Below, in pieces: positions 13,017-62,940 of a stretch of DNA of 64,000 bases. The stretch's first letter is position 1. Every line of letters begins with the position of its first letter. The stretch lies in sequence record LC597490.1; one strand, written 5' to 3'. The notes beneath the pieces are model-generated. The model saw only the letters and a program-made list of their open reading frames with translations, was not told the DNA's origin and ran no database searches. The position numbers and the translations under genes were made by a program.

Positions 13017-13215
13017 GCCCACCCGTACTACTGTGCTTGTCCTATATCATGTCCCACTATAGCAACGAAGGTTTAAAATTTTTCAGCGACAAGGTATATC
13101 CTTTAGTGAGGCTTTTGGAATCTTTCGGTGCCCACCCCTATTGATACAGAGGTCTCATATCATTGTCCAGCTCATGACAACGTAAACCGAGCGTCAACGA
13201 AAGGAAGGTAGGACT

Positions 13216-13404
13216 ATGAACATCTATTCGAACGAGGATATGAAGTCATTAATCCTTGATATGAAGAAGGCTTGTGACACATATCGAGAACTAGCACAGG
13301 AAGCAGAACAACGTAAGGACTATGACAAGGTATTGCACTGGAACACTAGATTATCAGAAGTAGAAGCAAGTGTATTGATGTTATTACCATGTATTGAAGA
13401 TTAA
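13216..13404 (+). CDS. Hypothetical protein
   Basis: 62 aa with SD. Confidence 0.75.
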   Translation: MNIYSNEDMKSLILDMKKACDTYRELAQEAEQRKDYDKVLHWNTRLSEVEASVLMLLPCIED

Positions 13405-13427
13405 TCACACAAGGGGAGGAAGTTATT

Positions 13428-13958
13428 ATGTTTAAAGTATTAAGTAATGAAGGTATTGATAAGTTAGCAATTAAGTTAGTGAACAAGCATATGCCACTCA
13501 TCTTGAAGGACTTAGGATTGGATACTCATGATGGTATTGATAAGCGCATCTTTGTGCATCGAGGTTATTATCATAAGCAAGGTGTTAATGGCTATTGCTA
13601 TACTGACCTTGGTGGTGTACTAGGTGCAGGTGGAGTTATCCTTAATCCTCACTATATACCAGGTAGTGCATACATCGTATTGTATCCACTTGAGATGCTA
13701 CACTACACTAGAGCTGATAGACAGCGTGTTGAGGATACTAGCCATGTACGTCGCTTTACAAGAGCATTCAAGAGAAAGCTTATCTTCACACTAGCACATG
13801 AGCTAGAGCATTATCGTCAGCATTATAGTGGTGACTATTATCAGTATGAAGTAATCTGGGACTTCGGGTTACTGTCACCATATAGAAATCGTCAGTGTGA
13901 GGACCTAGCTAATGAGTATGCAGAGAAGTATATCAAGTCACTGAAAGGGTGGTATTAA
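13428..13958 (+). CDS. HExxH zincin-like metalloprotein
   Basis: TLAHELEHYRQ followed by CEDLANEYA. Confidence 0.75.
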   Translation: MFKVLSNEGIDKLAIKLVNKHMPLILKDLGLDTHDGIDKRIFVHRGYYHKQGVNGYCYTDLGGVLGAGGVILNPHYIPGSAYIVLYPLEMLHYTRADRQRVEDTSHVRRFTRAFKRKLIFTLAHELEHYRQHYSGDYYQYEVIWDFGLLSPYRNRQCEDLANEYAEKYIKSLKGWY

Positions 13959-24443: not shown

Positions 24444-26522
24444 ATGACTAAATTTGCGAAAAGCTTTTACATTGTAGGAAACCACGATACGGATACATTA
24501 CCAGTAAGAAAGTATGTTATTGACAACATCAGAAGAGACTTTGATTTAGAAGAAGTACCACATGAAGCAGTTGGAAGTTTAGCAGTATTATTATCAGAAA
24601 GAGATGCAAGATTCCGTGTAAACAACGGGCAAGGTAAGTTGTTCTGTTCTTGTGGATATCAAGGTGATGCAGTAACAGTATTTGAAAAGGTAGTTGCGGA
24701 TGATGCCATCTTCCATGTAGGAATGCTTGATGAGGAGAGAGAGGCAGAAGAAAAGAAAACATTTGAACATAACTTCTATGATTTAAAGAGAATCGTGACA
24801 TGCCCAGAGTGTGGTAGCACAGAGCATGAGATTGTAAATGTGTCTGGTGTGGACGCTGTAAAAAATCCTATGTATCTGAAAATCTATCATAATGAGAATG
24901 GTATTTCATTGTCTTATGGTATCCAGAGTTATTACTTCAATCCGAATGTAGAGAAGCTTGGTACGAAGCTGGGCCGAGCACGCATTACATTCTCATATAA
25001 AACAAACATGTTCTACTTTGTACGTGGTGGTAAAGTCCGTAATATCTCTTACGGTACATTCCCAAGTAATACAGCATCAGGAGAGTTCTATGATGTATTC
25101 CAACATGCAAACTACAATGAGGAGTGGAAAGCAATTGTTAAAGAATTCAAGGAGACGATTATTAAGCATATGGGGGCTTTTATTCCAGAAGAGTTGGTTA
25201 ATCTAACAAATGGACACAACCTGATTTTATTCATGGCTAGTATTGTTTGTCCGCACTTAACGATTCTTCCATTCAAGCCAGATACACATGGTTTACGAGA
25301 TGGAGCAAAAGTATTAAGAAAGCTACCACTGAAGAAGAAAGCTGTTACACAGTTCTTAAATGGACCAGTGACAAAAGCGATGACTCCATATGTGAACAAC
25401 CAAGGAGATATTCGTTTCTTTGCAATGGTTACTTCTTTAGTAGAAGACCCGAACTATCGTTTAACATTGTTAAAAACATATAAAGAGTATTGCGACAAGC
25501 ATATCAGAAACAATTGGGGCACAGATAGAATTTCCTCAGTGAAGTCATTTGATATGGTAGTAAATGAAATGAAAAACTATGATTTCCCGCAGGAAGCTAT
25601 TGATTGGTTAAAGTCTCTACATCCAACAGATGCAAGTATGTATCATGCAATGGTTCGTATGAGTACAGAACCAGTTAAGGAGTGGAATCATGAGAAGAGA
25701 GAAATGATTGATACAGGGGAGAAGAAAGTGAATCTTAGTAGTGTAACTTGGTTGACTCGTGACTCACACCGTATGTATCAGGATATCATTCAGGCTCTAC
25801 CAGGTTATGACCTACGTTATAGTGGGAACATGAGAGAGACGCATGACAGACTGACTAGAGACTATGGTCGTGTGAAACAAGCACCACGTACAATCCCTTA
25901 CTCTGAAGATGAAAGAACATATCTAACTGCTTCTTATGGTGGATATGACTTCGTATTACCAGAGTTAACAACAGAGTTAGTAGAATGTGGTCAGGCATTA
26001 GATATCTGCGTAGGTGGATATGGTAATGAGGTAGCTGAGAAACGTACACTGATTATCTTTGTGAAGAAAGAAGATAAGTATGTGGCGTGTATTGAAGTAA
26101 CTCCTGATGGAAACATGTCTCAAGCAAAAGGATATGGCAACAATAGATTCCGTCCACTAGCAGATGATGTGATTGATGCAATTGCACATTGGGCTAATAA
26201 TGGTGGCGTGAGTCTAAGCACGTATGACATGAACTCACACAAACGTAGACTAGAAGAAAAGTACGCACACTTATTCGAACGTCCTGAGTTCTTAGTAAAA
26301 GAATTAGGTAATCCAGAAGAGTCTGTACGTCTAGAGATTACACAAGAGATGCTTGAGCAAGAACCAGTAAGAGCAGAAGCATATCAACCAGAGCCTAATC
26401 CATTTGATGCACTTGCTTTAGAACCTGCACCTGTATATGGAAGAGCACCAGTAGCAGCTAATGTGGGACAACCAATTATGGCAGAATTGATTGGAGACCT
26501 TAACGATGACCTTCCATTCTAA
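24444..26522 (+). CDS. PcfJ-like domain protein with N-terminal Zn-ribbon
   Basis: CSC..CPEC; C-terminal LPELTTELVECGQALDICVGGY..ACIEV..SQAKGYGN fits the PcfJ pattern. Confidence 0.8.
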   Translation: MTKFAKSFYIVGNHDTDTLPVRKYVIDNIRRDFDLEEVPHEAVGSLAVLLSERDARFRVNNGQGKLFCSCGYQGDAVTVFEKVVADDAIFHVGMLDEEREAEEKKTFEHNFYDLKRIVTCPECGSTEHEIVNVSGVDAVKNPMYLKIYHNENGISLSYGIQSYYFNPNVEKLGTKLGRARITFSYKTNMFYFVRGGKVRNISYGTFPSNTASGEFYDVFQHANYNEEWKAIVKEFKETIIKHMGAFIPEELVNLTNGHNLILFMASIVCPHLTILPFKPDTHGLRDGAKVLRKLPLKKKAVTQFLNGPVTKAMTPYVNNQGDIRFFAMVTSLVEDPNYRLTLLKTYKEYCDKHIRNNWGTDRISSVKSFDMVVNEMKNYDFPQEAIDWLKSLHPTDASMYHAMVRMSTEPVKEWNHEKREMIDTGEKKVNLSSVTWLTRDSHRMYQDIIQALPGYDLRYSGNMRETHDRLTRDYGRVKQAPRTIPYSEDERTYLTASYGGYDFVLPELTTELVECGQALDICVGGYGNEVAEKRTLIIFVKKEDKYVACIEVTPDGNMSQAKGYGNNRFRPLADDVIDAIAHWANNGGVSLSTYDMNSHKRRLEEKYAHLFERPEFLVKELGNPEESVRLEITQEMLEQEPVRAEAYQPEPNPFDALALEPAPVYGRAPVAANVGQPIMAELIGDLNDDLPF

Positions 26523-52050: not shown

Positions 52051-53526
52051 ATGGAAGTGGCAAAATTAGTAGGTATCGCTCGTGTTTTAAAAGGTGCTCG
52101 TTTTAAATGGTCTGGGGAGGATTTTGAAGTAGTAGTAGCAGGTTCAAACCCAGTCGTTAAAACAAATCTTCATGGTGAGGATGTAGAAGTTGGCAATCTT
52201 TCTACTTTTATTACAGAAGATGTTGCTGATGTAAAAGTAATTGTTGGTGACGCATTCGTTAAGCCTGAAGCACCTTCACACGAATCAACTATCAAGGAAA
52301 AATTAAAAGCTAAAGCTCGTTCGAAGCAATCATCAGTTTCAATTGATGCATCTGGTATTCATATCAATGCTAGTGCAATCTCAACGCCTGTTACTGCTAA
52401 ACAGCAATTACGTACTGACACCAAAGTAGGTAAGCTTGCATCAGAAGTTGGCAAGATTAAATTAGGTTCTGGTTTAGTAAAAGGTCGCTTAGATTCAATT
52501 GAAAATGCAGCTTATGATGCAAAATCAATTGCTGAAGAGTCTCAACGTACAGCTGGCTTCTCAGCTAAAGTATCTAAGGAAGCATCTCGCATCCAAGATG
52601 AAAAACTAGCTGAAGTATCTCGTCGTGTTGGAAAATTAGAAGTTAAAAATGAACTTACAAAAACTAAGGAGGAAAATTCAATGAACTTACAACAAAAATT
52701 CGCTCAAAAATCTCAAGAGGTAGCTAACCGTAATAACTTACAGGAGAAATTCGCTGCAAAATCGGCTTCAAAACAAAAAGGTTTCGGTTCAATCGTTAAC
52801 AACTTCAAAGGTTTATTCGGTAAAGTGGAAGGTTTATTTGCATTCTCACCACTTACAGGTGGTTTAGCTGTTAAGAAGAAAGATGGCGGTTTAGTAGCTT
52901 ATAAAGATGGTGGTTTAACTGATGTTTCTGGTTTATCTTTAGACTTCAATGTACCAGCATTCAAGTTACCAGTAGCAGCAAAAGATGTAAAAGCTGGAGA
53001 CGTTGTTCTTCATAACGGTGAAGCAGCTTACGTTATCGGAGTTAACGATGACTACTTAGAAACTATCGTACCAGAGAAAGCTTCTAAAGGTTCTGTATTA
53101 CCTGTTAAGAATATCTTATTCGGTCAATCATTCTATGTTGTTGTTAAAACATTAGATTCAGCTGGTAACGGTGGTTTCGACCCAATGTTACTTCTTGCAT
53201 TAGGTGATGGTAACAAAGACGACTTACTTCCACTTCTTTTAATGGGTGGAGGTTTAGGCGGTAACGGTCAAGCAGGTGCAATCGACCCAATGACTTTAAT
53301 GTTACTTCAAGATAAAACTGATGACTTATTACCACTTATCTTAATGCAACAAGGTGGTTTAGCAGGTCAAGGTTTTAATCCATTATTCTTCTTACTAGGA
53401 GAAGATAAAGGTTCAAAATCTGATTTACTTCCATTACTTCTTATGCAACAAGGTGGCGGTCTTTTCGGACAAGCAGCACCAGCTCCAGCTGCACCAGCAG
53501 TAGAAGTTAAAAAAGATCAAAAGTAA
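52051..53526 (+). CDS. 491-aa protein with C-terminal DLLPLLLM/GG repeats
   Basis: C-terminal half paralogous to 53665-54477; in-frame internal AAGGAGG + ATG at 52681. Confidence 0.82.
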   Translation: MEVAKLVGIARVLKGARFKWSGEDFEVVVAGSNPVVKTNLHGEDVEVGNLSTFITEDVADVKVIVGDAFVKPEAPSHESTIKEKLKAKARSKQSSVSIDASGIHINASAISTPVTAKQQLRTDTKVGKLASEVGKIKLGSGLVKGRLDSIENAAYDAKSIAEESQRTAGFSAKVSKEASRIQDEKLAEVSRRVGKLEVKNELTKTKEENSMNLQQKFAQKSQEVANRNNLQEKFAAKSASKQKGFGSIVNNFKGLFGKVEGLFAFSPLTGGLAVKKKDGGLVAYKDGGLTDVSGLSLDFNVPAFKLPVAAKDVKAGDVVLHNGEAAYVIGVNDDYLETIVPEKASKGSVLPVKNILFGQSFYVVVKTLDSAGNGGFDPMLLLALGDGNKDDLLPLLLMGGGLGGNGQAGAIDPMTLMLLQDKTDDLLPLILMQQGGLAGQGFNPLFFLLGEDKGSKSDLLPLLLMQQGGGLFGQAAPAPAAPAVEVKKDQK

Positions 53527-53664: not shown

Positions 53665-54477
53665 ATGAAAAACTTATTCGCAGGTGTTAAAGGTCAATTT
53701 GGAAAGGTAGAGAACGTATTTGCATTTTCACCAGTAACAGGTGGTCTAGCAGTTAAAGTAGGTAACGGTCAGTTTGTTGCATTCCAAGATGGTCAATTAG
53801 TAGATGTACAAGGCTTAACTCTTGATTTTAAAGTTCCAGCGTTCAAATTACCAGTTGTTGCTTCTGAAGTTCAAGCAGGTGATATCGTATTAAATGGCGC
53901 TGAATATTTATATGTAACAGGTGTTTCTGATAACTACGTAGAAGCTGTATCTCCAGCTCGTCGTGAAAAAGTAAATGTGTTACCAACTACAAATCTATTC
54001 TTTGGTAAACCATTCTTCACTGTTGTTCGTACTATGGACGGAGCAGGTGCTGGTTTTGACCCAACAATGCTTTTATTAATGTCTGATGGTGGAAACAAAG
54101 AAGATTTACTTCCATTCTTACTTATGTCAGGTGGTTTAGGTGGCGCTCAAGCTGCTGGTCAAATCAATCCAATGATGCTTATGGCACTTCAGGATTCAAC
54201 TGACGACTTATTACCTCTTCTACTTATGCAACAAGGTGGCGCAATGGGTGAAGGTTTCAATCCATTAATGTTACTTGCAATGGGTGAAGGTAAAGGCGGT
54301 AAGTTAAATGATTTACTTCCACTTATGATGATGCAAGGTGGAGGCGCTGCTGGTGCAATGAACCCAATGATGATGATGATGCTTATGGGCGACGGTAAAG
54401 GTGGCGACATGAAAGACATCATGATGATGCAAGCATTATCTGGTGGCAATGGCTTCAACTTATTCGGAGCTAAGTAA
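53665..54477 (+). CDS. 270-aa protein with DLLPLLLM and NPMMMM repeats
   Basis: Paralog of the C-terminal half of 52051. Confidence 0.82.
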   Translation: MKNLFAGVKGQFGKVENVFAFSPVTGGLAVKVGNGQFVAFQDGQLVDVQGLTLDFKVPAFKLPVVASEVQAGDIVLNGAEYLYVTGVSDNYVEAVSPARREKVNVLPTTNLFFGKPFFTVVRTMDGAGAGFDPTMLLLMSDGGNKEDLLPFLLMSGGLGGAQAAGQINPMMLMALQDSTDDLLPLLLMQQGGAMGEGFNPLMLLAMGEGKGGKLNDLLPLMMMQGGGAAGAMNPMMMMMLMGDGKGGDMKDIMMMQALSGGNGFNLFGAK

Positions 54478-54683: not shown

Positions 54684-54787
54684 TATTATCATAGATTTTA
54701 AGGAAAGCCATGTAATGGATGTAAGTTCATAGGAACTTTATCATATAAAAAATAAAAAAATTGACAATTGAAAGGGAGTTATTAATT

Positions 54788-55639
54788 ATGCGTAAAGTAG
54801 TATATGGTTCAACAACAGTAGACATCGAGGACAACAACTTAACAGTGGAGGACATTCGTGAAGTAATGTCTGAAACATACCCTGAGTTAGCAAATGCAAC
54901 ACACACTGAGCGTGATGGTGTTATTGAGTTTAAGGTACAGGCGGGCACGAAAGGTGCTCTTCGTGTTGTTAAGTATGGTTCAACTACAATCGACATCGAA
55001 GATGATGCGTTAACTGTTAATGATATCCGTGAAGTTATGTCGGAAACTTACCCTGAATTGGCGAATGCATCTCATACACAAGAGGGTAACGTTATCGAGT
55101 TCAAGGTGCAAGCTGGTACAAAAGGAGCGCTCCGTATTGTAAAATACGGTTCGACTTCTATTGATATCGAGGACGATGCTTTAACAGTCAACGATATCCG
55201 TGAGGTAATGTCTGAGACTTACCCAGAGCTTGCTAACGCTTCTCATACGCAAGAAGGGAACGTTATTGAGTTTAAAGTCCAAGCAGGTACGAAAGGTGCT
55301 CTCCGTGTTGTAAAATACGGAAGCACTTCTATCGACATTGAGGATGATGCATTGACTGTAAATGACATCAGAGAGGTTATGTCAGAAACATATCCTGAGT
55401 TAGCAAACGCTTCTCATACTCAGGAAGGAAATGTCATCGAATTTAAAGTACAAGCTGGTACAAAGGGTGCTTTACGAGTAGTAAAATATGGTTCTACTAC
55501 AATTGATATCGAAGACGACGCACTAACTGTTAACGATATTCGTGAAGTAATGTCAGAAACGTATCCAGAACTAGCAAATGCATCTCATACTCAAGAGGGC
55601 AATGTGATCGAATTTAAAGTGCAAGCAGGAACTAAAGGT
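54788..55639 (+). repeat. Five tandem 171-bp coding repeats
   Basis: Units begin at 54788 (168 bp), 54956, 55127, 55298, 55469; proteins nearly identical, many third positions differ. Confidence 0.95.
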
Positions 55640-55687
55640 GGTCTTGAGTTCTTCAAAGCTATTGCACCAAAATTAAGAAAGAAGTAA
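54788..55687 (+). CDS. Penta-ubiquitin-like precursor (PRTRC protein C-like units ending AGTKG)
   Basis: ATG 54788 after AAAGGGAG; 56 + 4x57 aa repeats with YPEL and AGTKG, plus a 15-aa tail. Confidence 0.88.
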   Translation: MRKVVYGSTTVDIEDNNLTVEDIREVMSETYPELANATHTERDGVIEFKVQAGTKGALRVVKYGSTTIDIEDDALTVNDIREVMSETYPELANASHTQEGNVIEFKVQAGTKGALRIVKYGSTSIDIEDDALTVNDIREVMSETYPELANASHTQEGNVIEFKVQAGTKGALRVVKYGSTSIDIEDDALTVNDIREVMSETYPELANASHTQEGNVIEFKVQAGTKGALRVVKYGSTTIDIEDDALTVNDIREVMSETYPELANASHTQEGNVIEFKVQAGTKGGLEFFKAIAPKLRKK

Positions 55688-55693
55688 TATGAT

Positions 55694-55727
55694 GGGATGG
55701 AGGCCTTGGGCTTTCATCCCTTTTTTT
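55694..55727 (+). terminator. Intrinsic terminator after the poly-Ubl gene
   Basis: GGGATGGAGGC/GCTTTCATCCC plus T7. Confidence 0.8.
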
Positions 55728-55764
55728 GGTGTAATTAAGTTGTATTTTTAAAGGAGGAATAGAT

Positions 55765-56148
55765 ATGGCTGAAGACAGAAGTATGCAAGAAGTATTAGAT
55801 GACATCCTTAGTGTTGCAGAAGGTGAAGAAACTCCAGTACCAGCTGAAGCAGCTATTGAGCAAAATTCATGGGAAAGAGAAGGTTTTGGTGCATTAGAGG
55901 CATTTGTTTGTGAGAGATTAGAAGATTTACCTCACCAACCGATTCTTAGTGCAGATATCAAAACAAAGGTTAATAGAATCATGTCTGCTGAAAAGGTATC
56001 TGATTTAGATGATTTATCGGTGTCTGCATTAGAAGCAACTGTTGAGGAAATGAGACGTCCATTAAACGGTCATTTGAATCGTTTGGATGATTTTGCGCCT
56101 CGTGTAGCTCGTGCAATGCCAATTGAAAGAGAAAGTGACTTTATCTAA
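55765..56148 (+). CDS. Acidic hypothetical protein in the Ub-like cluster
   Basis: 127 aa, AAAGGAGG SD. Confidence 0.8.
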   Translation: MAEDRSMQEVLDDILSVAEGEETPVPAEAAIEQNSWEREGFGALEAFVCERLEDLPHQPILSADIKTKVNRIMSAEKVSDLDDLSVSALEATVEEMRRPLNGHLNRLDDFAPRVARAMPIERESDFI

Positions 56149-56162
56149 AGGAGGGAATTAAT

Positions 56163-57692
56163 TTGACTAATCTAACAGAATTAAGAAGTCGTGTATCACA
56201 TGTAGTATCATCTAGAAGATTATTGTCTGATGGTTTAATTAAGGACCATATGGCGATTCCAACAAACGTAGCTGAAGAAAAGAAAATTGTTCAAGACACA
56301 GTTTTTGAAGCAATTAAAAATACATTTATTGGGTGCCGTATTAATCCCAATAAAAATGCATTCTCTGTTAAACTTGATGGTGCGATTAACGTTAAAGCAC
56401 AAGAGTTATATGATTATATCCAAGAGCATCCACATTGGAAATCATTTTTAGAATCTCAACATTCTAGTAAGTTACGTACAATATTAAACTTACAAAATGT
56501 GTATCAAGAAAGGAGAGAATTAAAATTTAAAAGAGAAGATGATGGACGTCGCTTTATTTATGTCCCGTTTGAACCACATGATATTCCGAGTTATCATGAC
56601 CAAGGTTTATATCATATGCTTCAGTATTTGAAACAAAGTTTCGACAGAGAGAAAGCAGCATCTGTTATCTTTGATGAAGTAATGCAATTGATTGAAACTG
56701 AACGTCAACGTCGTATCGAAGAACGTAATCGTTTAATGCAACGTATCGAAGCGAAGTACAAGGAAGATATCAAAGCAAGCTTGTTGAAACCAATTGGTAC
56801 GATTCGAGGAGATGTTCGTGAGAAACTTATCCAAGAACGTATGGTTAAATGGTGTAATGAGCAAGGTTTAGCGCCAGCGATTCCTCAAGAGCTTACATAC
56901 CAGAACATTATTCCAGTTGGTACGGAAGTATCAGTTGTTGTTAAGTCAGGTTCTCAAGAAGAAGGATGGTTTGCAGTTCCACGTTCTGGAGGATTTGAGA
57001 TTCCTGAAGGCTTTGAACGTTTAATGGTTTATGATAATGTAACTCGTCACGATGCATTACATCAACGTTCACGTAGTGGTTCAGCTCCAATCGTAATCAA
57101 TGAAGATACATTCACTGAGTTCGATATCAATTACTGGAAGCACTTACTACCTGAAGAACATGCTCAGTATAAAGCAGGTTATGAGGCTGTAGTGGCTTCT
57201 GTAACAGCTGCTGAAGTTAAGATAGTACAAGACTTACTTGATGAGCAAAAACGTGAGGAAGAGGCACGTATTGAGCGTCAAAAGCAAGAGCTTGAACAGA
57301 AACGTGAAGAGTTAAGACGTCAACGTGAGCGTGAAGATGAAGAGTTGCGTCGTCTTGAAGCAACGTATGAAAGAGAAAATGAGCAGAAACGTCAAGAAAG
57401 AAAGCGTAGAAGCTTAGACGGTATTACTCGTCAATTACAAGAACAAGCTGAAACTCATACGGTAGAAGATGATGTATTAGATATCGTTGAATCTGATTAC
57501 ACAATCTTATACAATCCGTTTGGTGTAGAAAGTAAGTTCACGTTAGTACATGCAAGTGGTGAAGAAGAAAACTTTGCAAGTGAAGATGATTTAAAAGTAC
57601 GTATCTTTGATGAATTAGATTTAGATGAGCACGAAGCTGTTGTGTATCATAAAATCAATCAAAGCCGTATCTACAAACAATTAACAAAATAA
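56163..57692 (+). CDS. 509-aa protein with a long charged coiled coil, in the Ub-like cluster
   Basis: TTG start after AAGGAGGG; E/R/Q-rich helix in the C-terminal half. Confidence 0.8.
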   Translation: MTNLTELRSRVSHVVSSRRLLSDGLIKDHMAIPTNVAEEKKIVQDTVFEAIKNTFIGCRINPNKNAFSVKLDGAINVKAQELYDYIQEHPHWKSFLESQHSSKLRTILNLQNVYQERRELKFKREDDGRRFIYVPFEPHDIPSYHDQGLYHMLQYLKQSFDREKAASVIFDEVMQLIETERQRRIEERNRLMQRIEAKYKEDIKASLLKPIGTIRGDVREKLIQERMVKWCNEQGLAPAIPQELTYQNIIPVGTEVSVVVKSGSQEEGWFAVPRSGGFEIPEGFERLMVYDNVTRHDALHQRSRSGSAPIVINEDTFTEFDINYWKHLLPEEHAQYKAGYEAVVASVTAAEVKIVQDLLDEQKREEEARIERQKQELEQKREELRRQREREDEELRRLEATYERENEQKRQERKRRSLDGITRQLQEQAETHTVEDDVLDIVESDYTILYNPFGVESKFTLVHASGEEENFASEDDLKVRIFDELDLDEHEAVVYHKINQSRIYKQLTK

Positions 57693-57722
57693 ATTGTAAT
57701 ATAACTAAGGAGGAAATTTATT

Positions 57723-58448
57723 ATGGCAAACCGTCCAGATTCTATTAACATTGAGATTTTACAAGAGGGAGTTACAATCAAGACAACGAAAAATGGTGTA
57801 ACAACTTTAAAGGAAACAAATCTTGAGCAGGTTCAACGTCAATTAACAAGCAATGAGCGTATTGAGACGCCGTTGCTTCCAAGTATTTGGGGTGTACAAA
57901 AGTTTGTTAAACGTGGTAATAAAGAGTTATACGTTATTACGACTCCTCCAGGAATTCGTAAAGTACAGTACACTGGTGATGACCGTGGTGAGTATGAGAT
58001 TCCTGTACCAGCTGCGATTTGGTTTGTAACAGCACAAGAACGTTCTGGTGGCGGACGTCAATTGATTCATACAACAGTTTATGCAATTAAAAATCCTATT
58101 TTAACAGGTATTGAACAATTGTATCGTATGCCATTTAGTAACTGTGATAACTCGTACATTTGCTGGGGAGATGAGAGTCCACAAATTTCATCACCAAAAA
58201 GTGTTCAATCTATCCCAGACCGTTTCTTCTCTATGCCATTTAACAGTGACTTAGGAAGCAATGCGTATCAACCAATTAAAGAAGTAGTGGATGGAAGAGA
58301 AATTAGTCACTTCCGTATCAATCACTTATTCCGTTACTTAGATCGTAAATTGAAAGAGGATAAAGATTTCCGTTTCCCGAACAATCATTTAAATAGTTAC
58401 GAGTCATTTAAGCGTGTACTTGACCACGAACTTCGTCGTTTATCTTAA
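57723..58448 (+). CDS. Prokaryotic E2-like protein (PRTRC protein B / Prok-E2_D-like)
   Basis: LYRMPFSNCDNSYICWG and FFSMPFNSDL match the LY.aPF.Nv....ICwG and FF.s.Fn..l pattern; sits between Ubl and JAB. Confidence 0.78.
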   Translation: MANRPDSINIEILQEGVTIKTTKNGVTTLKETNLEQVQRQLTSNERIETPLLPSIWGVQKFVKRGNKELYVITTPPGIRKVQYTGDDRGEYEIPVPAAIWFVTAQERSGGGRQLIHTTVYAIKNPILTGIEQLYRMPFSNCDNSYICWGDESPQISSPKSVQSIPDRFFSMPFNSDLGSNAYQPIKEVVDGREISHFRINHLFRYLDRKLKEDKDFRFPNNHLNSYESFKRVLDHELRRLS

Positions 58449-58507
58449 TCTGTATTTTGGTAGTTTTAAAATTAAAAAAAACAAACAATTAAAAGGAGAG
58501 ATTTATT

Positions 58508-59890
58508 ATGACAAAGGCAGCAGCAAAAGCAAACGGAATGGCAGCGCTAAGAGCGAAAATGGCAGGACAAACTATGGGATTCCACACTGGTCCTCAAACA
58601 GCTGAGGTTTATGCACAAAAACCAACAAACATCGTTACAGCAGGTAATGGTGTTTTCCGTGTAATCCAAAAGGATATCGGTGCTTTCATTACGAAACTAG
58701 CTGATGGTAAGATTCCAGGTTTACCTGAAATGCAAGAAGGAGTGGAATTAGCGATTCCAAAGATTCCTTACAAGTATTGGTTACAAGTATTATCATTCTA
58801 TAAAGATGTAAATGCAAAAGATGGTACAGAAGCATCTGTTATCTTCTTCTGGAATACGAATAATGTTCAGATTCCAACTCATTATGACCCAACTCCTGCA
58901 CAAGCAGCGAAGGGTGAGTTAGGGCCAGAAGTAAAAGGTTTAACGCAAGATGGTCAATTAATCATTTATTGTCCAGTACAAAAGAACTCTGGTAGTTTAT
59001 CAGACTTTACGAAAGATTCATTTGTAGATTGGTTACGTCTTAATACAGCTCAGTTATTAGAAACACATTCTCATAATACAATGGGTGCGTTCTGGTCAGG
59101 AACAGATGACAGCAATGAGAACTATCCACAGTTCTACGGTGTTATGGGTAAAGTTTCAAGCCCACAACCTGAGTATCGTTTCCGTTATGCTTTAGGTAAA
59201 GAAAAGTTCGATTGTGAGTTATGGGAACTATTCGAAAAACCTCAAGTAAAAATGACTGAAACAGTTATTGTTAACATCCCAGGTGTAGGTGAGTACAAAG
59301 ATGAGCAAGAAGTGAAGAACTTAGACTTCAATGGTCCATGGCCGATGGTTGAATATCCAGATGATTGGATGGGTCAACATAGTAAGAGTGTATACACACC
59401 AACTTACACAACTCCGTACCAACGTAAAACATATGGTGCAGCAGGAACTCAAGTTCACGGAGGAGCAGGTGGTGGTAACTTTCCCAGTCTCCACGGTTCA
59501 GAAGCCTGGGGAGACGGCTGGGGGGATTCAGGCTACTGGCCTGGCGTTTCTGGTCAATCTGGCCTTGGCATGGGTGCGGAAGTAATCGAAGGTGACTTCG
59601 GATACGGAGAAGGTACCAGGCAAGGGCAAGAATCGTTCGAAGAATCGTACAAAAAACTCTTACAAGAACCAGTCGCAGGGCAGGGGACGTGGACGTTCGC
59701 AAAAGCATGGGAAAAGAAAGTAAGTGAAGGTCAGCTTGAAACAGATGGAACAACTGTTGATTATGTAATCATGGAACCAACTGAAGCTGAAGAACGTGAT
59801 GAAATTCATGCATTAATTGGTGAATTAATTAACTTTGGTACGTATGCGACCATCGTTGATATTGCAAGAGATGAACACCTCGTAGAGTAG
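58508..59890 (+). CDS. JAB/MPN+ metallo-isopeptidase (PRTRC protein A-like)
   Basis: ETHSHNTMGAFWSGTDD motif; upstream catalytic Glu in GTEAS; Gly-rich C-terminal extension. Confidence 0.9.
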   Translation: MTKAAAKANGMAALRAKMAGQTMGFHTGPQTAEVYAQKPTNIVTAGNGVFRVIQKDIGAFITKLADGKIPGLPEMQEGVELAIPKIPYKYWLQVLSFYKDVNAKDGTEASVIFFWNTNNVQIPTHYDPTPAQAAKGELGPEVKGLTQDGQLIIYCPVQKNSGSLSDFTKDSFVDWLRLNTAQLLETHSHNTMGAFWSGTDDSNENYPQFYGVMGKVSSPQPEYRFRYALGKEKFDCELWELFEKPQVKMTETVIVNIPGVGEYKDEQEVKNLDFNGPWPMVEYPDDWMGQHSKSVYTPTYTTPYQRKTYGAAGTQVHGGAGGGNFPSLHGSEAWGDGWGDSGYWPGVSGQSGLGMGAEVIEGDFGYGEGTRQGQESFEESYKKLLQEPVAGQGTWTFAKAWEKKVSEGQLETDGTTVDYVIMEPTEAEERDEIHALIGELINFGTYATIVDIARDEHLVE

Positions 59891-59959
59891 GCATTAGCCT
59901 ACTTTACATTTTTTTTATTGCACTACATATCTTATTTATATTAAAAGGAGAGATTTATT

Positions 59960-60817
59960 ATGAAACTTGAAAAAACTTATTCTTTAGATACTATGTACAA
60001 AATTGCTAAACACTTTATCGTAATTGGTGCTGGTGGTAATGGTGGTTACTTTATTCCACAATTAGCTCGTATGGTTTCTGTTCAAAACAAAATTCGTGAA
60101 GTACAACGTTTACCGTTACATCGTATTACAATCATTGAAGCTGATGGCGTAGAAGCAAAGAACTTAACTCGTCAAAACTTTATCTCATCTGATATTGATA
60201 AGAATAAAGGTGAAGTAATGGCAGCTCGTTATGCTCGTGCATTTGGTCTTGAAATTGGATTAGTAGCTCAGTATCTTGATAGTCCAGATATGTTAGCTAA
60301 GATTATGCGTGAAAGCAAATCAAAAGAAACACCAGTTATTTGCGGAATGGTAGATAACAATAAAACTCGTAAGTTAATGCATGATGCATTTAAATCATAT
60401 GATGGTGCATTTTATCTTGATGCAGGTAATGAAGAGTTTGCAGGACAATGTGTTCTAGGTTATAACCATCGTAAAGATCGTTTTGTTTTACCAAGAGAAG
60501 GTGGAGATTCGATTCAAAGCTTTAGCTTACCAAGTGTTTGTGAGATGTTCCCAGAGGTAATGGAAGCGAAAGATAAGTTGCCAACTGAAATGTCTTGTGC
60601 GGAACGTTCTGAATCAGCTCCTCAGAATATTTATACAAACATGACAGCAGCAAATGAAGCATTAGGATTTATTAATCATTTATTAACTAGTAATGCAACT
60701 GGTACAACACCAACTGGATTACGTGTTCATGCAACAATCTTTGATTCTCGTACAATGAATAAAACAACTCGTTTTAATCGTACAAGTGAACTTGAAAAAT
60801 ATGCAGCGGGGAAATAA
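59960..60817 (+). CDS. ThiF/E1-like adenylating enzyme (PRTRC ThiF-like)
   Basis: VIGAGGNGG, EADGVEAKNLTRQNF, VDNNKTR, YLDAGN; candidate catalytic Cys in EMSCAER; no CxxC Zn pairs. Confidence 0.92.
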   Translation: MKLEKTYSLDTMYKIAKHFIVIGAGGNGGYFIPQLARMVSVQNKIREVQRLPLHRITIIEADGVEAKNLTRQNFISSDIDKNKGEVMAARYARAFGLEIGLVAQYLDSPDMLAKIMRESKSKETPVICGMVDNNKTRKLMHDAFKSYDGAFYLDAGNEEFAGQCVLGYNHRKDRFVLPREGGDSIQSFSLPSVCEMFPEVMEAKDKLPTEMSCAERSESAPQNIYTNMTAANEALGFINHLLTSNATGTTPTGLRVHATIFDSRTMNKTTRFNRTSELEKYAAGK

Positions 60818-60845
60818 TCCCTGCTGTTTTTAGGAGGAAATTATT

Positions 60846-61319
60846 ATGAATTATACATTCTTCTGGGGTGGTATATTCTCTCAATGGCATAAATCTAAAT
60901 TTGAAGTTGATGGTATTACATTTAATTGTGCTGAACAATACATGATGTACCAAAAAGCATTATTATTTGGAGATGAAGAAGTTGCTAAGAAAATATTAAC
61001 GAAGTCTAATCCAAGAGATCAAAAGGATTTAGGTAGAAAAGTAAAAGGATTTGTAGAAGAAACCTGGAATAAACATGCGAAAGAAATTGTTTATAAAGGT
61101 AACTATGCAAAGTTCACTCAAAATCCTGAACTATTAAAAGGATTAAAGGCTACAGGTCAAACATTATTAGTAGAAGCAAGTCCTCATGATGACATCTGGG
61201 GTATTGGGTTAGATGAAAAAACAGCTCGTAAAACACCAGAAAAAGATTGGAAAGGAACAAATTGGTTAGGCGAAGTACTAACTAATTTACGATTTAATTT
61301 AATCGAGGAAGGCAAATAG
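60846..61319 (+). CDS. NADAR (YbiA-like) family protein
   Basis: FSQW, FNCAEQYMMYQKA, KFTQNPEL, LVEASPHDDIWGIG, GTNWLG. Confidence 0.92.
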   Translation: MNYTFFWGGIFSQWHKSKFEVDGITFNCAEQYMMYQKALLFGDEEVAKKILTKSNPRDQKDLGRKVKGFVEETWNKHAKEIVYKGNYAKFTQNPELLKGLKATGQTLLVEASPHDDIWGIGLDEKTARKTPEKDWKGTNWLGEVLTNLRFNLIEEGK

Positions 61320-61866: not shown

Positions 61867-62940
61867 ATGCTAGACTTTTTATTAGGTGCGATATCATTAA
61901 TAGGATTTATCGCATTAGGCGCATTTGCGTATTCAATTTGGAAAGCTGCTCGAAATCATGAAACAACGGTGTACGACACGAAGGACGAACAATCTTATGG
62001 AACCTTTGCGTTCGATAATAAGTTTTGGGTGTTGCCTGTAGTATTTGTTTTAATGGCAACGATCTTCTTCTTTAACTTATGTACGACTCGTGTTCAACCA
62101 GGTTATAACGGTATTACATATTCATTAGTATCAGGTTTAAAGAATGACGTTAAAACTCCAGGTTTAAAAGTACACTATCCATGGGAAACAATTTATGATT
62201 ATCCAACATCAACAGAAACGGTTTACTTAAAGAAACCAAAGAAAGATGATGAAGAGGATGACAAGAGCTTTTCAGTTAATACAAACGATGGTAAAAGCGT
62301 AGACGTAGATGCGGTTTATTCGTATCATATGGAATCTGAAAAACTTCCACATATCTTTGCACGTTTCCGTCGCCAGCCTTCTAATAAAATTGAGGAATCT
62401 TATATCAAACAAGAGATTTCTAACCATGTACAAGCTGCAACAACAAAGTACTCTGTACTAGAAGTTTATTCACACAAACGTTCTGAAATCACAAAAGAGA
62501 TTAAAGACAATCTATCAAAATCACTTGCAAAAGATGGTATTGTATTAGAGAAGTTTACAATCGCAGATGTTCGTCCTGATAAAGATACTAGAGGGAAGCT
62601 ACAGGCTATTGCCGACATGCAAAACGAACAAGAACGTTTAGCTCGTGAAGAACAAGTTAAGCGTCAACAAGCAGCAAATGCTAAGATCGAAGCTGAAGGT
62701 AAGAAGGTAACAGAACTTATCAATGCTGACCGTGATGCAGAAAAGATTCGTATCAACGCTGATGCACAATCAGCAGCCAACGATAAGTTAAAAGCTTCAT
62801 TAAGTCCAGAAGTTATTCAATCAGAATGGATTAAGAAATGGAATGGACAAAAATCTGTTGTTGAGGGTGGCTCTGGTTCTATTATTAATATGCCAGCTGA
62901 CATCATCAAGCAACAATTGGAACAAGGGGCTAAGAAGTAA
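61867..62940 (+). CDS. SPFH/Band-7 (prohibitin-like) membrane protein
   Basis: Two N-terminal TM helices; TRVQPGYNGI..PGLKVHYPW..YP..; TNDGKSVDVD; AE.E-rich coiled coil; WIKKWNG. Confidence 0.9.
   Translation: MLDFLLGAISLIGFIALGAFAYSIWKAARNHETTVYDTKDEQSYGTFAFDNKFWVLPVVFVLMATIFFFNLCTTRVQPGYNGITYSLVSGLKNDVKTPGLKVHYPWETIYDYPTSTETVYLKKPKKDDEEDDKSFSVNTNDGKSVDVDAVYSYHMESEKLPHIFARFRRQPSNKIEESYIKQEISNHVQAATTKYSVLEVYSHKRSEITKEIKDNLSKSLAKDGIVLEKFTIADVRPDKDTRGKLQAIADMQNEQERLAREEQVKRQQAANAKIEAEGKKVTELINADRDAEKIRINADAQSAANDKLKASLSPEVIQSEWIKKWNGQKSVVEGGSGSIINMPADIIKQQLEQGAKK

What the first reader, a model, noticed from the sequence alone, without database searches (positions are those of the whole stretch)
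54788..60817. Phage-encoded ubiquitin-like conjugation operon with a polyubiquitin-style precursor
Seen: in one co-directional block, a five-unit Ubl, two unknown genes, an E2-like protein (ICWG Cys), a JAB peptidase (HSH-x6-S-x2-D) and a ThiF/E1 enzyme (GxGxxG, NLTRQNF, SC Cys). Established: Ubl ending (A)GTKG plus E2-like protein B, JAB protein A and ThiF is the PRTRC gene set, usually described on mobile elements together with ParB and with no demonstrated substrate. Inference: this phage carries its own writer (E1, E2) and eraser/maturase (JAB) to tag host or phage proteins, possibly to disable defences or to undo host Ubl-based defences that modify virion proteins. No ParB is in the window, so this may be a repurposed version.
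Basis: partly seen in the sequence, partly recalled or inferred. Interest (0 to 1): 0.93.

Follow-up and report, generated by a model that had tools for sequence, protein, structure and literature searches.

The report
Phage-encoded polyubiquitin-like conjugation operon
A 230-kb Bacillus cereus phage carries its own ubiquitin-like tagging kit (activating enzyme, conjugating enzyme, trimming protease) together with a tag gene built, like eukaryotic polyubiquitin, of five head-to-tail copies, and the same kit recurs only in other very large phages; what it tags is still unknown.

Summary
The window is Bacillus phage vB_BceM_WH1. Positions 54788-60817 hold six co-directional genes: a five-unit Ubl (Prok_Ub/PRTRC_C), two orphan genes, an E2-like protein with an invariant Cys, a JAMM peptidase and a ThiF-type E1.

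The same six-gene order occurs in 12 loci, all of them phage isolates, jumbo-phage contigs or metagenome contigs. Two scans of 185,579 cellular genomes found none.

The polyubiquitin-style precursor is the strongest new point. Ubl copy number runs from 1 to 7. Every unit ends in AGTKG, junction residues vary, and the last unit always carries a short cap. One phage encodes five separate capped Ubl genes instead of a fusion. Units stay 96-100% identical in protein but only 75-80% identical in DNA, and their codons differ more than random choice predicts.

It is a PRTRC-related ("6d") system, not a canonical member. Only the Ubl passes NCBI's cut-off. PRTRC D, E, F and ParB are absent, replaced by two clade-specific proteins: gp212, which ends in DFI, and gp213.

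The most likely mechanism is that JAB cuts the precursor and E1 then E2 conjugate the monomers to an abundant target. Whether that target is a phage or a host protein is undecided. I rate this a new variant of a known kind, of high interest.

The parts
54788..55687 (+). gp211, polyUbl precursor. Five beta-grasp-family units at 54788-54955, 54956-55126, 55127-55297, 55298-55468 and 55469-55639, each ending AGTKG, plus a 15-aa C-terminal cap GLEFFKAIAPKLRKK (55640-55684). The RBS AAAGGGAG lies 8 nt before the ATG.
   Evidence: Pfam Prok_Ub E 3.4e-27 in 5 stretches. PRTRC_C 73.6 bits against cut-off 45.95. Unit boundaries. RBS read. Units 2-5 are 96-100% identical in protein and 75-80% in DNA. 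The GenBank record labels it 'virion structural protein'.
55694..55720 (+). Terminator-like hairpin (12 pairs, 7 of them G-C, followed by TTTTTTT) directly after the Ubl gene. It would let the Ubl transcript exceed the enzyme transcripts.
   Evidence: Consensus scan; sequence read. This is a pattern match only.
55765..56148 (+). gp212, a 127-aa acidic orphan protein that ends in ...ESDFI. The family keeps a C-terminal D-[FY]-I in all 12 loci.
   Evidence: No Pfam, NCBIfam, PHROG or PADLOC hit. C-terminal motif and fixed position between the Ubl gene and gp213.
56163..57692 (+). gp213, a 509-aa orphan protein: a conserved N-terminal region of about 335 aa, a long E/R/K-rich helix, and a small C-terminal domain. 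It always sits immediately upstream of the E2 gene. Candidate specificity factor or substrate.
   Evidence: 63 cluster representatives at E<=1e-3 among 1.84 billion proteins. Distant members are each directly followed by a Prok-E2_D gene. The AF2 model has pLDDT 74.8, and about 85-90 over most of residues 11-410, with no PDB or BFVD fold match. hhalign finds no similarity to PRTRC_F.
57723..58448 (+). gp214, E2-like protein of the Prok-E2_D / PRTRC_B family. P137-F-x-N140-x6-C147-W-G lies in a loop after a beta-meander, and H201 lies in a downstream helix.
   Evidence: A 93%-identical homologue (P0001) hits Prok-E2_D at 39.7 bits against GA 25, over residues 65-176. 7 of 11 homologues hit it and 3 of 11 hit PRTRC_B weakly. 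Invariant residues. The AF2 model has pLDDT 74 and gives no significant PDB fold hit.
58508..59890 (+). gp215, JAMM/MPN+ metallopeptidase (E108, H187, H189, S197, D200) with an N-terminal extension and a long clade-specific C-terminal extension (GPWP..DWMGQH motif, a G/Y-rich linker and a small terminal domain).
   Evidence: PRTRC_A E 3.3e-8 at 33 bits, below the 101.8 cut-off. Prok-JAB E 0.003. The full JAMM motif is invariant in 9 sequences, including the canonical PRTRC_A of phage Dina.
59882..59907 (+). Terminator-like hairpin overlapping the JAB stop codon.
   Evidence: Pattern match only.
59960..60817 (+). gp216, a single-domain ThiF-type E1 of 285 aa: nucleotide loop G23-G28, N68xxR71Q72, D132 and candidate catalytic C213.
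   Evidence: Pfam ThiF 44.3 bits against cut-off 28.1. PRTRC_ThiF is the best NCBIfam hit at 102.7 bits, below the 144.75 cut-off. Invariant residues. The best PDB relatives of the profile are Uba1 (1e-10) and E. coli ThiF (1e-9).
52051..53526 (+). gp208, possibly associated: coiled coil, a conserved domain of about 110 aa, and DLLPLLLM repeats. A gp208-like gene lies directly upstream of the Ubl gene in 7 of 12 loci. The paralogue gp209 is at 53665-54477. Candidate partner or substrate only.
   Evidence: Linkage. No family hits. Labelled 'virion structural protein' in the record. Absent next to the operon in KLEB27-3 and L016.

Best explanation
This is a self-contained, phage-borne ubiquitin-like protein-conjugation pathway. 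It is a diverged, phage-restricted branch of the uncharacterised PRTRC / 'type 6d' operons.

Proposed steps:
1. gp211 is made in excess as a five-unit precursor.
2. The JAMM peptidase gp215 cuts after each ...AGTKG. This releases five monomers of about 6 kDa with a free C-terminal Gly and removes the 15-aa cap.
3. The ThiF-type E1 gp216 adenylates that Gly and takes it onto Cys213.
4. The Ubl passes to Cys147 of the E2-like gp214.
5. The Ubl is then joined to lysines of a target. The two clade-specific proteins always encoded between the Ubl gene and the E2 gene (gp212 with its DFI C-terminus, and gp213) act as specificity factors or first substrates. gp215 also acts as the eraser.

What is shown by sequence and comparison: the gene set, the intact catalytic residues, the precursor architecture and its conservation. 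What is inferred: steps 2-5.

My best guess for the target is an abundant phage-encoded protein, such as a virion or assembly component, possibly the frequently linked gp208. The reason is that copy number reaches seven units per gene or five separate genes, and a terminator-like hairpin isolates the Ubl gene. This last part is the weakest. I give it roughly 40% among the possible target classes.
For: - **Family assignments.** Prok_Ub 3.4e-27; PRTRC_C above cut-off; ThiF above cut-off; PRTRC_ThiF and PRTRC_A are the best though sub-threshold NCBIfam hits. A 93%-identical E2 homologue hits Prok-E2_D at 39.7 bits against GA 25, and the canonical PRTRC_B of phage Dina hits the same model at 1.6e-45.
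- **Catalytic residues.** They are invariant across the clade and in the canonical PRTRC proteins: the JAMM motif, the E1 loop, Arg, Asp and Cys, and the E2 Cys147, N140 and H201.
- **Gene order.** Ubl(n)-gp212-gp213-E2-JAB-E1 occurs in 12 loci. Even distant gp213 relatives sit next to a Prok-E2_D gene.
- **Precursor logic.** Loci carry 1, 2, 4, 5, 6 or 7 units, each ending in an invariant AGTKG. The residue after that Gly varies (A, S, M, G, T, V). Every terminal unit is capped. L021 has five separate Ubl genes, each AGTKG plus 1-2 residues. The single Ubl of phage Arash ends exactly in GTKG. Vibrio phage D69 has three units with long spacers.
- **Selection on each unit.** There are 32-35 synonymous against 0-2 non-synonymous differences between units. 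dS is saturated in most loci. Units are orthologous position by position between WH1 and Edson, yet one Ser/Ala difference separates the two phages in all four of units 2-5. Codon differences exceed random expectation: 195 observed against 159.5 +/- 10.6, p about 4e-4.
- **Dosage and transcription.** A terminator-like hairpin follows the Ubl gene directly.
- **Virion hint.** The GenBank record labels gp211 and gp208 as virion structural proteins.
Against: - No biochemical data exist for any PRTRC-type system, so steps 2-5 rest on analogy.
- The window's own E2 and JAB sequences do not reach Pfam or NCBIfam cut-offs.
- The E2 model (pLDDT 74) found no UBC-fold match in the PDB.
- The beta-grasp fold of the unit was not modelled here.
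- The basis of the 'virion structural protein' label could not be traced; no paper was found.
- The comparable label on the Arash E1 and E2 comes from a proteome that also contained ribonucleotide reductases and RNA ligases, so it shows expression rather than virion location.
- The operon sits among early or auxiliary-looking genes (Spx, NADAR; tRNA-repair genes in KLEB27-3), not in the structural module.
- gp208 is not linked to the operon in 5 of 12 loci.
Confidence: 0.55

Rival explanations
1. The same conjugation chemistry, aimed at the host. The phage tags host proteins such as defence or takeover targets, or uses its JAB to strip host Ubl conjugates (Bil or CBASS-Cap2 type).
For: The operon lies in the + strand block of small early-type and auxiliary genes. 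It is flanked by genes typical of host manipulation or counter-defence: Spx-like gp202 and NADAR gp217 in WH1; CCA-adding enzyme, RNA ligase and polynucleotide kinase in KLEB27-3; RNase H-like RVT_3 in L019 and L021. Host Ubl-based defences that modify phage tails are known (Bil; PMC11601603).
Against: Up to seven Ubl units or five Ubl genes, plus a dedicated terminator-like hairpin, suggest bulk consumption rather than catalytic regulation. A pure eraser would not need an E1, an E2 and its own Ubl. No substrate clue exists. Apart from weak E1 matches to CBASS E1-E2 models, no PADLOC hit links the enzymes to a known defence family.
Confidence: 0.2
2. The five-unit protein is not a precursor. 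It works as an intact multi-beta-grasp protein (a structural or filament-forming protein like the Ubl3 proteins of Bil and Bub operons), and only its last unit, after cap removal, is activated and conjugated.
For: Bacterial Ubls with two or three beta-grasp domains exist and are used uncleaved, forming dimers and Ca2+-dependent filaments (PMC11601603). gp211 is annotated as a virion structural protein.
Against: Here the internal units are near-identical. Each keeps the full AGTKG activation motif, which is invariant across the clade. Linker length and the residue after the Gly vary freely. Copy number ranges from 1 to 7. L021 encodes the units as five separate capped genes, and Arash as one. 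The Ser/Ala difference between WH1 and Edson is shared by all four of units 2-5, which indicates selection for identical products.
Confidence: 0.1
3. It is a phage-carried exclusion or defence system. It works like Bil and tags virion proteins of competing phages during co-infection.
For: The closest experimentally understood Ubl+E2+JAB+E1 operons (Bil) act this way (PMC11601603 and PMC11601596). Canonical PRTRC sets ride on mobile elements and on a temperate-size phage, Ralstonia phage Dina.
Against: The clade was found only in large lytic-type phage genomes and not in the cellular genomes scanned. There are no PADLOC matches for the Ubl, E2 or JAB. The E1 is a single 285-aa domain, unlike the BilD architecture.
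Confidence: 0.07
4. It is not protein conjugation. The E1 and Ubl act in sulfur transfer or cofactor synthesis (ThiS/MoaD-like) or in peptide modification (MccB-like).
For: The E1 profile also matches E. coli ThiF, MccB and Uba4. The Ubl gives weak sub-threshold hits to SAMP1 and MoaD models.
Against: There is no rhodanese, ThiG/ThiH, MoaE or sulfurtransferase partner. An E2-like protein with an invariant Cys and a JAMM peptidase are strictly linked. A catalytic carrier would not need 5-7 copies. The C-terminus is KG rather than GG. Iyer et al. separate these operons from the sulfur-carrier ones (PMC1779556).
Confidence: 0.03

Closest known systems
PRTRC system (TIGRFAM/NCBIfam set A, B, C, D, E, F, ThiF, ParB), equivalent to operon type 6d of Iyer, Burroughs and Aravind 2006. 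A complete example in a phage is Ralstonia phage Dina gp02-gp07.
   Same: A small Ubl ending G-[TR]-K-G. An E2-like protein with a Cys and a downstream His (Prok-E2_D). A JAMM peptidase with an N-terminal extension. A single-domain ThiF E1. The same relative order C ... B-A-ThiF.
   Different: Only protein C passes the curated cut-off. D, E, F and ParB are absent. Protein F's position is taken by two unrelated orphan proteins, gp212 and gp213. The Ubl is multi-copy. The JAB carries a C-terminal extension of about 230 aa. The clade was found only in large phages. No PRTRC system has a demonstrated activity or substrate.
Eukaryotic polyubiquitin genes (such as yeast UBI4 and human UBB/UBC); this comparison rests on established knowledge.
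   Same: Head-to-tail identical modifier units with no or few spacer residues. A cap on the last unit that must be removed. Copy number that varies between lineages. Strong protein identity alongside high synonymous divergence between units.
   Different: The beta-grasp family is unrelated (Prok_Ub). The unit is 56-57 aa and ends KG, not GG. Processing is presumably by a JAMM peptidase encoded in the same operon. Here synonymous differences even exceed random expectation.
Bil (type I/II BilABCD) antiphage ubiquitination operons
   Same: Separate Ubl, E2, JAB and E1 genes. Thioester-type catalytic cysteines are expected. Bil is linked to phage virion proteins because it tags the central tail fibre.
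   Different: Bil is host-encoded defence. BilD is a large IAD-AAD-CYS E1, whereas gp216 is a 285-aa single domain. Bil Ubls have 1-3 non-identical beta-grasp domains used uncleaved.
Bub (6E/DUF6527) operons and their Ubl3 proteins
   Same: Tandem beta-grasp domains in one polypeptide. Iyer et al. 2006 already called the 1-3 repeats 'reminiscent of poly-ubiquitin'.
   Different: Bub uses Tyr and Ser oxyester intermediates and a DUF6527 serine protease. Here Cys is invariant in both E1 and E2, and there is no DUF6527. Ubl3 domains differ from one another and form one folded unit, not repeated cleavable units.
Lambda and T1 tail-assembly proteins TAPI (gpI, Ubl) and TAPK (gpK, JAB + NlpC/P60)
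   Same: A phage-encoded Ubl with a C-terminal Gly, paired with a JAB peptidase and used in virion assembly (PMC1779556).
   Different: There is no E1 or E2, so no ATP-dependent conjugation. The Ubl is a single domain fused to another domain. The genes lie in the tail module.

Membership tests
PRTRC system | PRTRC_C: small Ubl ending G-x-K-G (TIGR03738) | tested here: met
   73.6 bits against cut-off 45.95, in 5 stretches. AGTKG is invariant across the clade.
PRTRC system | PRTRC ThiF-family protein (TIGR03736) at equivalog level | tested here: not met
   It is the best NCBIfam hit, but 102.7 bits is below the 144.75 cut-off. The invariant residues are shared with the Dina PRTRC ThiF.
PRTRC system | PRTRC_A JAB protein (TIGR03735) | tested here: not met
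   33.3 bits against cut-off 101.8, and only residues 184-229 match. The JAMM motif is shared with the Dina PRTRC_A.
PRTRC system | PRTRC_B E2-like protein (TIGR03737 / Pfam Prok-E2_D) with Cys and downstream His | tested here: inconclusive
   gp214 itself gives no hit. The 93%-identical P0001 scores 39.7 bits against GA 25 on Prok-E2_D. 3 of 11 homologues hit PRTRC_B at 9e-4 or weaker. C147 and H201 are conserved.
PRTRC system | PRTRC proteins D, E and F | tested here: not met
   gp212, gp213, gp208, gp209 and their homologues give no NCBIfam or Pfam hit. hhalign of gp213 against Dina protein F gives probability 0.1%.
PRTRC system | Associated ParB-related protein | tested here: not met
   None is annotated in the 64-kb window. 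The ten largest unassigned + strand ORFs give no ParB or PRTRC hit. The rest of the 230-kb genome was not examined.
E1 / ThiF superfamily | Rossmann nucleotide loop, Arg finger, Mg-binding Asp, catalytic Cys | tested here: met
   Pfam ThiF 44.3 bits against cut-off 28.1. G23/G25/G26/G28, R71, D132 and C213 are invariant. The PDB profile hits Uba1 and ThiF. Activity could not be tested.
JAMM/MPN+ metallopeptidase | E ... HxH-x7-S-x2-D zinc site | tested here: met
   E108, H187, H189, S197 and D200 are invariant in 9 sequences. Pfam Prok-JAB scores only 17.9 bits against 25.
UBC/E2 fold | Helix, beta-meander, (H)PN-x7-8-Cys loop, C-terminal helices | tested here: inconclusive
   The AF2 secondary-structure order and P137-F-S-N140-x6-C147 fit this pattern. 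Foldseek against the PDB gave no hit with E < 0.1; Atg10 appeared only at rank 24 with E 0.54.
Beta-grasp ubiquitin-like fold (Prok_Ub, PF14454) | Profile match and beta-grasp structure | tested here: met
   Profile match of 94.5 bits against cut-off 25. All 15 polyUbl relatives carry PF14454. No 3-D model of the unit was made, and the unit profile finds no solved structure.
Polyubiquitin-type precursor | Identical head-to-tail units each ending in the activation motif, a capped last unit, and proteolytic release | tested here: inconclusive
   The architecture is met by sequence in 10 or more loci, and an unfused version exists. Cleavage itself cannot be tested with these tools.
Bil (BilABCD) | [quoted passage not shown] | tested here: not met
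   gp216 is 285 aa with one adenylation domain. The BilD architecture is as described in PMC11601596.
Bub (6E/DUF6527) | DUF6527 serine protease; E1 Tyr and E2 Ser in place of Cys | tested here: not met
   No DUF6527 hit was found in the block. Cys is invariant in both the E1 and the E2.

The most novel reading that the evidence does not exclude
This is the first virus-encoded complete ubiquitin-like conjugation cascade that is fed by a true polyubiquitin-type precursor. A clade of jumbo phages mass-produces a 6-kDa modifier and covalently attaches it to its own virion or assembly proteins, or in bulk to host proteins. That would be a new kind of post-translational step in phage morphogenesis or takeover. 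It uses two orphan proteins (gp212 and gp213) as a new class of E3-like specificity factors. Its repeat array is actively recoded at synonymous sites to resist recombination.
Probability: 0.35. Interest if true: 0.9.

Novelty: new variant of a known kind. Interest (0 to 1): 0.78.

Why it matters
- **A tractable model for PRTRC.** PRTRC/6d operons have been known from genomics since 2006 but have no demonstrated activity or substrate. A lytic phage that needs (or at least keeps) such a system would give an experimental model with a clear read-out: plaques, virion proteome and burst size.
- **Conjugation on the phage side.** It would put Ubl conjugation on the phage side of the phage-host conflict. 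So far it has been shown only for host defence systems (CBASS Cap2, Bil).
- **Independent origin of the polyubiquitin architecture.** The head-to-tail precursor would then have arisen outside eukaryotes, with the same logic: dosage, a capped last unit and a dedicated peptidase.
- **A natural example of recoding.** The repeat array is an example of synonymous recoding that keeps a tandem repeat stable.
- **New specificity factors.** gp212 and gp213 would be candidates for new E3-like or adaptor proteins.

Tried and rejected
- **Fold search of the E2 model.** pLDDT 74; no significant PDB match. The E2 fold is therefore unconfirmed by structure.
- **Fold searches of the gp213 model.** Run against the PDB and against BFVD; only the protein itself was found.
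- **PDB sequence and profile searches.** Nothing was found for the E2, JAB and Ubl profiles.
- **gp212, gp213, gp208 and their relatives.** Scanned against Pfam, NCBIfam, PHROGs and PADLOC with no family found.
- **gp213 against PRTRC_F.** hhalign found no relation. BLASTP of the Arash 320-aa protein against PRTRC_F found none either.
- **Cellular genomes.** Two scans of 185,579 genomes, with the E2 profile and the Ubl profile, found no relatives. The scans rest on short degenerate patterns, so divergent relatives could be missed.
- **Literature.** No paper was found on vB_BceM_WH1 or KLEB27-3. The basis of the 'virion structural protein' label is therefore unknown. The jumbo-phage survey of Iyer et al. 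2021 does not mention Ubl, E1 or JAB.
- **Arash 'structural protein' labels for E1 and E2.** Rejected as evidence of virion location. That proteome lists 116 proteins, including ribonucleotide reductases and RNA ligases.
- **Rfam.** No match in the operon region, and no group I intron match in the split JAB gene of L019.
- **The sigma-70-like TTGACA at 54761.** Rejected as a promoter, because its -10 element would overlap the start codon.
- **Assembly artefact or recent duplication of the repeat.** Rejected on the DNA divergence between units and on the position-by-position orthology with Edson.

Full report
**Identity of the window.** Window 54700-60900 is 100% identical to Bacillus phage vB_BceM_WH1 (LC597490.1; 229.8 kb; host B. 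cereus), record positions 178700-184900. It is 86% identical to Bacillus phage Edson. The block corresponds to gp211-gp216. In the record only gp216 ('ThiF family adenylyltransferase') and gp211 ('virion structural protein') carry a name. The operon lies in a long + strand run of small, mostly unnamed genes, about 45 kb from the portal and terminase genes, which are on the - strand.

- *Ubl.* gp211 (54788-55687; RBS AAAGGGAG 8 nt upstream) consists of five units of 56-57 aa, each ending AGTKG, followed by the tail GLEFFKAIAPKLRKK. It matches Pfam Prok_Ub (E 3.4e-27, five stretches) and NCBIfam PRTRC_C above the curated cut-off (73.6 against 45.95 bits).
- *E1.* gp216 matches ThiF above cut-off. 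Its best NCBIfam hit is PRTRC_ThiF (102.7 bits, below the 144.75 cut-off). The nucleotide loop, N-x-x-R-Q, Asp132 and Ser212-Cys213 are invariant in ten sequences, including the canonical PRTRC ThiF of Ralstonia phage Dina. The family profile finds Uba1, ThiF, UBA3, UBA2, MccB and Cap2 in the PDB.
- *JAB.* gp215 has the full JAMM site: E108, H187-x-H189-x7-S197-x2-D200. The site is invariant in nine sequences, including the Dina PRTRC_A. The HMM scores themselves are sub-threshold.
- *E2.* gp214 gives no direct family hit. A 93%-identical homologue scores 39.7 bits on Pfam Prok-E2_D (gathering score 25) over residues 65-176, which include the Cys. Seven of eleven homologues hit the model, and the Dina PRTRC_B hits it at 1.6e-45. 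P137, F138, N140, C147, W148, G149 and H201 are invariant in 13 sequences. An Asn seven residues before the Cys, and a His in a later helix, match what Iyer et al. described for the E2-like protein of their operon type 6d. An AF2 model (pLDDT 74) has the order helix, beta-meander, loop with the Cys, helices, but Foldseek found no significant PDB match. Structural confirmation of the E2 fold is therefore lacking.

**A conserved, phage-restricted module.**

- tblastn and pattern scans recovered the same gene order, Ubl(n)-gp212-gp213-E2-JAB-E1, in twelve loci. These are phages WH1, Edson and KLEB27-3; IMG/VR contigs of 194-264 kb; and metagenome contigs.
- Two scans of one genome for each of 185,579 bacterial and archaeal species, one with the E2 profile and one with the Ubl profile, found nothing.
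- More distant versions exist in Salmonella phage Arash and in Vibrio phages D69, D181 and D148. Ralstonia phage Dina carries a fully canonical PRTRC set, E-C-F-B-A-ThiF.
- Phage-borne PRTRC-like sets are therefore already present in databases. I found no study of their function. The characterised bacterial pathways are CBASS-Cap2, Bil and Bub. The 2021 jumbo-phage survey does not mention Ubl, E1 or JAB.

**The two 'unknown' genes belong to the system.**

- gp212 homologues (92-200 aa, acidic) end in D-[FY]-I in all twelve loci.
- A profile of the N-terminal 335 residues of gp213 finds only 63 cluster representatives among 1.84 billion proteins.
- The three non-isolate distant members whose contigs I fetched are each immediately followed by a Prok-E2_D gene; a fourth look-up simply returned KLEB27-3.
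- Neither protein matches any Pfam, NCBIfam, PHROG or PADLOC family. gp213 shows no similarity to PRTRC_F, whose position it occupies.
- The gp213 model is confident over most of residues 11-410 and has no structural neighbour in the PDB or BFVD.
- Strict linkage and position make the two proteins the best candidates for specificity factors or primary substrates. That is inference.

**The polyubiquitin-style precursor.** This is the best-supported new point.

- *Copy number.* It varies: 1 (Arash), 2, 4, 5, 6 and 7 units.
- *Conserved end.* The five C-terminal residues AGTKG are invariant across the clade.
- *Variable junctions.* The residue after the Gly (A, S, M, G, T, V) and the linker length vary.
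- *Caps.* The last unit always carries a short extra tail.
- *Unfused version.* In locus L021 the same five units are five separate genes, each AGTKG plus one or two cap residues and a stop.
- *Spacered version.* Vibrio phage D69 has three units separated by spacers of about 20 and 55 residues.
- *Rarity.* A search of 5.8 billion protein clusters found 15 multi-unit relatives, all carrying Prok_Ub and none with a meaningful name.

These facts are what one expects if the functional product is the monomer with a free C-terminal Gly, released by a peptidase. They are hard to reconcile with an uncleaved multi-domain protein such as the Ubl3 proteins of Bil and Bub.

**Selection on the repeat.**

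- WH1 units 2-5 are 96-100% identical in protein but 75-80% identical in DNA, with 32-35 synonymous and 0-2 non-synonymous codon differences per pair.
- The same pattern holds in eight other loci, where dS is mostly saturated.
- Each WH1 unit is most similar in DNA to the unit at the same position in Edson (0.85-0.92 on the diagonal against 0.74-0.82 off it). The array therefore predates the split of the two phages. Even so, one Ser/Ala difference (TCN against GCN) separates WH1 from Edson in all four of units 2-5. This suggests the units are held to one common protein sequence.
- Exact in-register matches between WH1 units are only 11-17 nt long.
- Codon differences at amino-acid-invariant positions exceed what independent draws from the phage's own codon usage would give: 195 observed against 159.5 +/- 10.6, reached by 0.04% of simulations.
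- I read this as selection to keep the repeats dissimilar in DNA, and so resistant to recombination, while identical in product. The codon table came from only 14 genes, so the size of the excess is approximate.

**Expression clues.** A strong terminator-like hairpin (12 pairs followed by T7) lies 7 nt after the Ubl stop codon. Weaker ones follow the JAB gene and the downstream NADAR gene. If functional, they would give more Ubl message than enzyme message. These are pattern matches only.

**What it does.**

- The biochemical outline is the best-supported reading: JAB maturation, E1 adenylation and thioester, E2 thioester, then transfer to lysine.
- The target is open. High Ubl dosage argues for an abundant target. 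The record's 'virion structural protein' labels on gp211 and gp208, and a gp208-like gene directly upstream of the Ubl gene in 7 of 12 loci, point towards phage particle or assembly proteins.
- I could not trace the basis of those labels.
- The similar labels on the Arash E1 and E2 come from a preparation in which 116 proteins, including ribonucleotide reductases, were detected.
- The neighbourhood instead looks like host-takeover or counter-defence territory: Spx-like and NADAR genes in WH1, tRNA-repair genes in KLEB27-3, RNase H-like genes elsewhere.
- Sulfur-carrier chemistry and a Bil-like exclusion role are less likely, for the reasons given under the rival explanations.

**Classification and novelty.**

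- The system works like, and descends from, the PRTRC/6d operons, but it fails the membership test for a canonical PRTRC. Only protein C passes the cut-off. A and ThiF are sub-threshold. B is recognisable only through homologues. D, E, F and ParB are absent.
- It is not Bil, because the E1 is a single domain. It is not Bub, because Cys rather than Tyr or Ser is conserved and there is no DUF6527.
- Tandem Ubl domains in prokaryotic operons were noted in 2006. Those belong to the 6E/Bub type and are not repeated cleavable units.
- I therefore rate this a new variant of a known kind. It is a phage-restricted PRTRC derivative with a true polyubiquitin-type precursor and two new obligatory partners.

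Noticed in passing
L019:12180-14653 (ENA contig k141_2027008): The JAB gene is split exactly inside the JAMM motif. The first part ends ...LLETHSH-stop and the second starts MAAFFSGTDD. The gap of about 1.1 kb carries a LAGLIDADG homing-endonuclease ORF (13183-13935) and has stops in all frames. It looks like a mobile intron in the most conserved site of the gene, but Rfam found no intron match.
   Followed up: partly
L021:1055-1944 (Logan SRR17418327 contig): Five separate tandem Ubl genes of 56-59 aa, each ending AGTKG plus 1-2 cap residues. They take the place of a fused polyUbl, upstream of the same gp212-gp213-E2-JAB-E1 set.
   Followed up: yes
L005:2379-3182 (Vibrio phage D69, OZ195729.1): A three-unit polyUbl in a distant phage clade. 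Each unit ends TGTKG, and the units are separated by spacers of about 20 and about 55 residues (the second spacer is acidic). A JAMM protein and an E1 follow. All are annotated as hypothetical proteins.
   Followed up: partly
L004:107-307 (Salmonella phage Arash, OQ632216.1): The single Ubl ORF (66 aa, ending ...RRTGTKG-stop) is annotated in the wrong reading frame (gp251c, 102-320). It would therefore have been missed in the published virion proteome search.
   Followed up: partly
window 52051-53526 and 53665-54477: gp208 and gp209 are paralogues. They share a conserved domain of about 110 aa (FGKVEG.FAFSP...VVKTLD) followed by three or four DLLPLLLM(Q)GG repeats. They match no family, and there is a weak relative in Bacillus phage G gp39. 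A gp208-like gene sits directly upstream of the Ubl gene in 7 of 12 loci.
   Followed up: partly
window 60846-61319: A NADAR-domain gene lies immediately after the E1 (Pfam 1e-52; PADLOC PDC-M42C 4e-46). A NADAR gene also lies near the operon in L019 (1354-1827). It may be a de-ADP-ribosylating counter-defence enzyme. Edson has a different gene at this position.
   Followed up: no
window 54956-55639: Codon choice among Ubl units 2-5 is over-dispersed. There are more synonymous differences than random draws from the phage's codon usage would give (p about 4e-4), and no exact in-register DNA match between any two of the five units is longer than 17 nt. This suggests selection against recombination between the repeats.
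   Followed up: yes
L019:15736-16398, L021:7121-7801, L016:11161-11973: An RNase H-like (RVT_3) gene directly follows the E1 gene in L019 and L021. A 270-aa gene in the same position in L016 was not scanned against any family library. WH1 has NADAR at this position. The slot after the E1 seems to hold variable auxiliary genes.
   Followed up: no
window 61867-62940: gp219 is an SPFH/band-7-like membrane protein (PHROG 200, E 1.6e-55).
   Followed up: no
window around 11300: There is a strand switch with a GC-skew sign change. The portal, terminase and neighbouring genes are on the - strand before it, and everything after it is on the + strand. A PcfJ-domain protein (gp140, 24444-26522) lies in the + strand block.
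   Followed up: no
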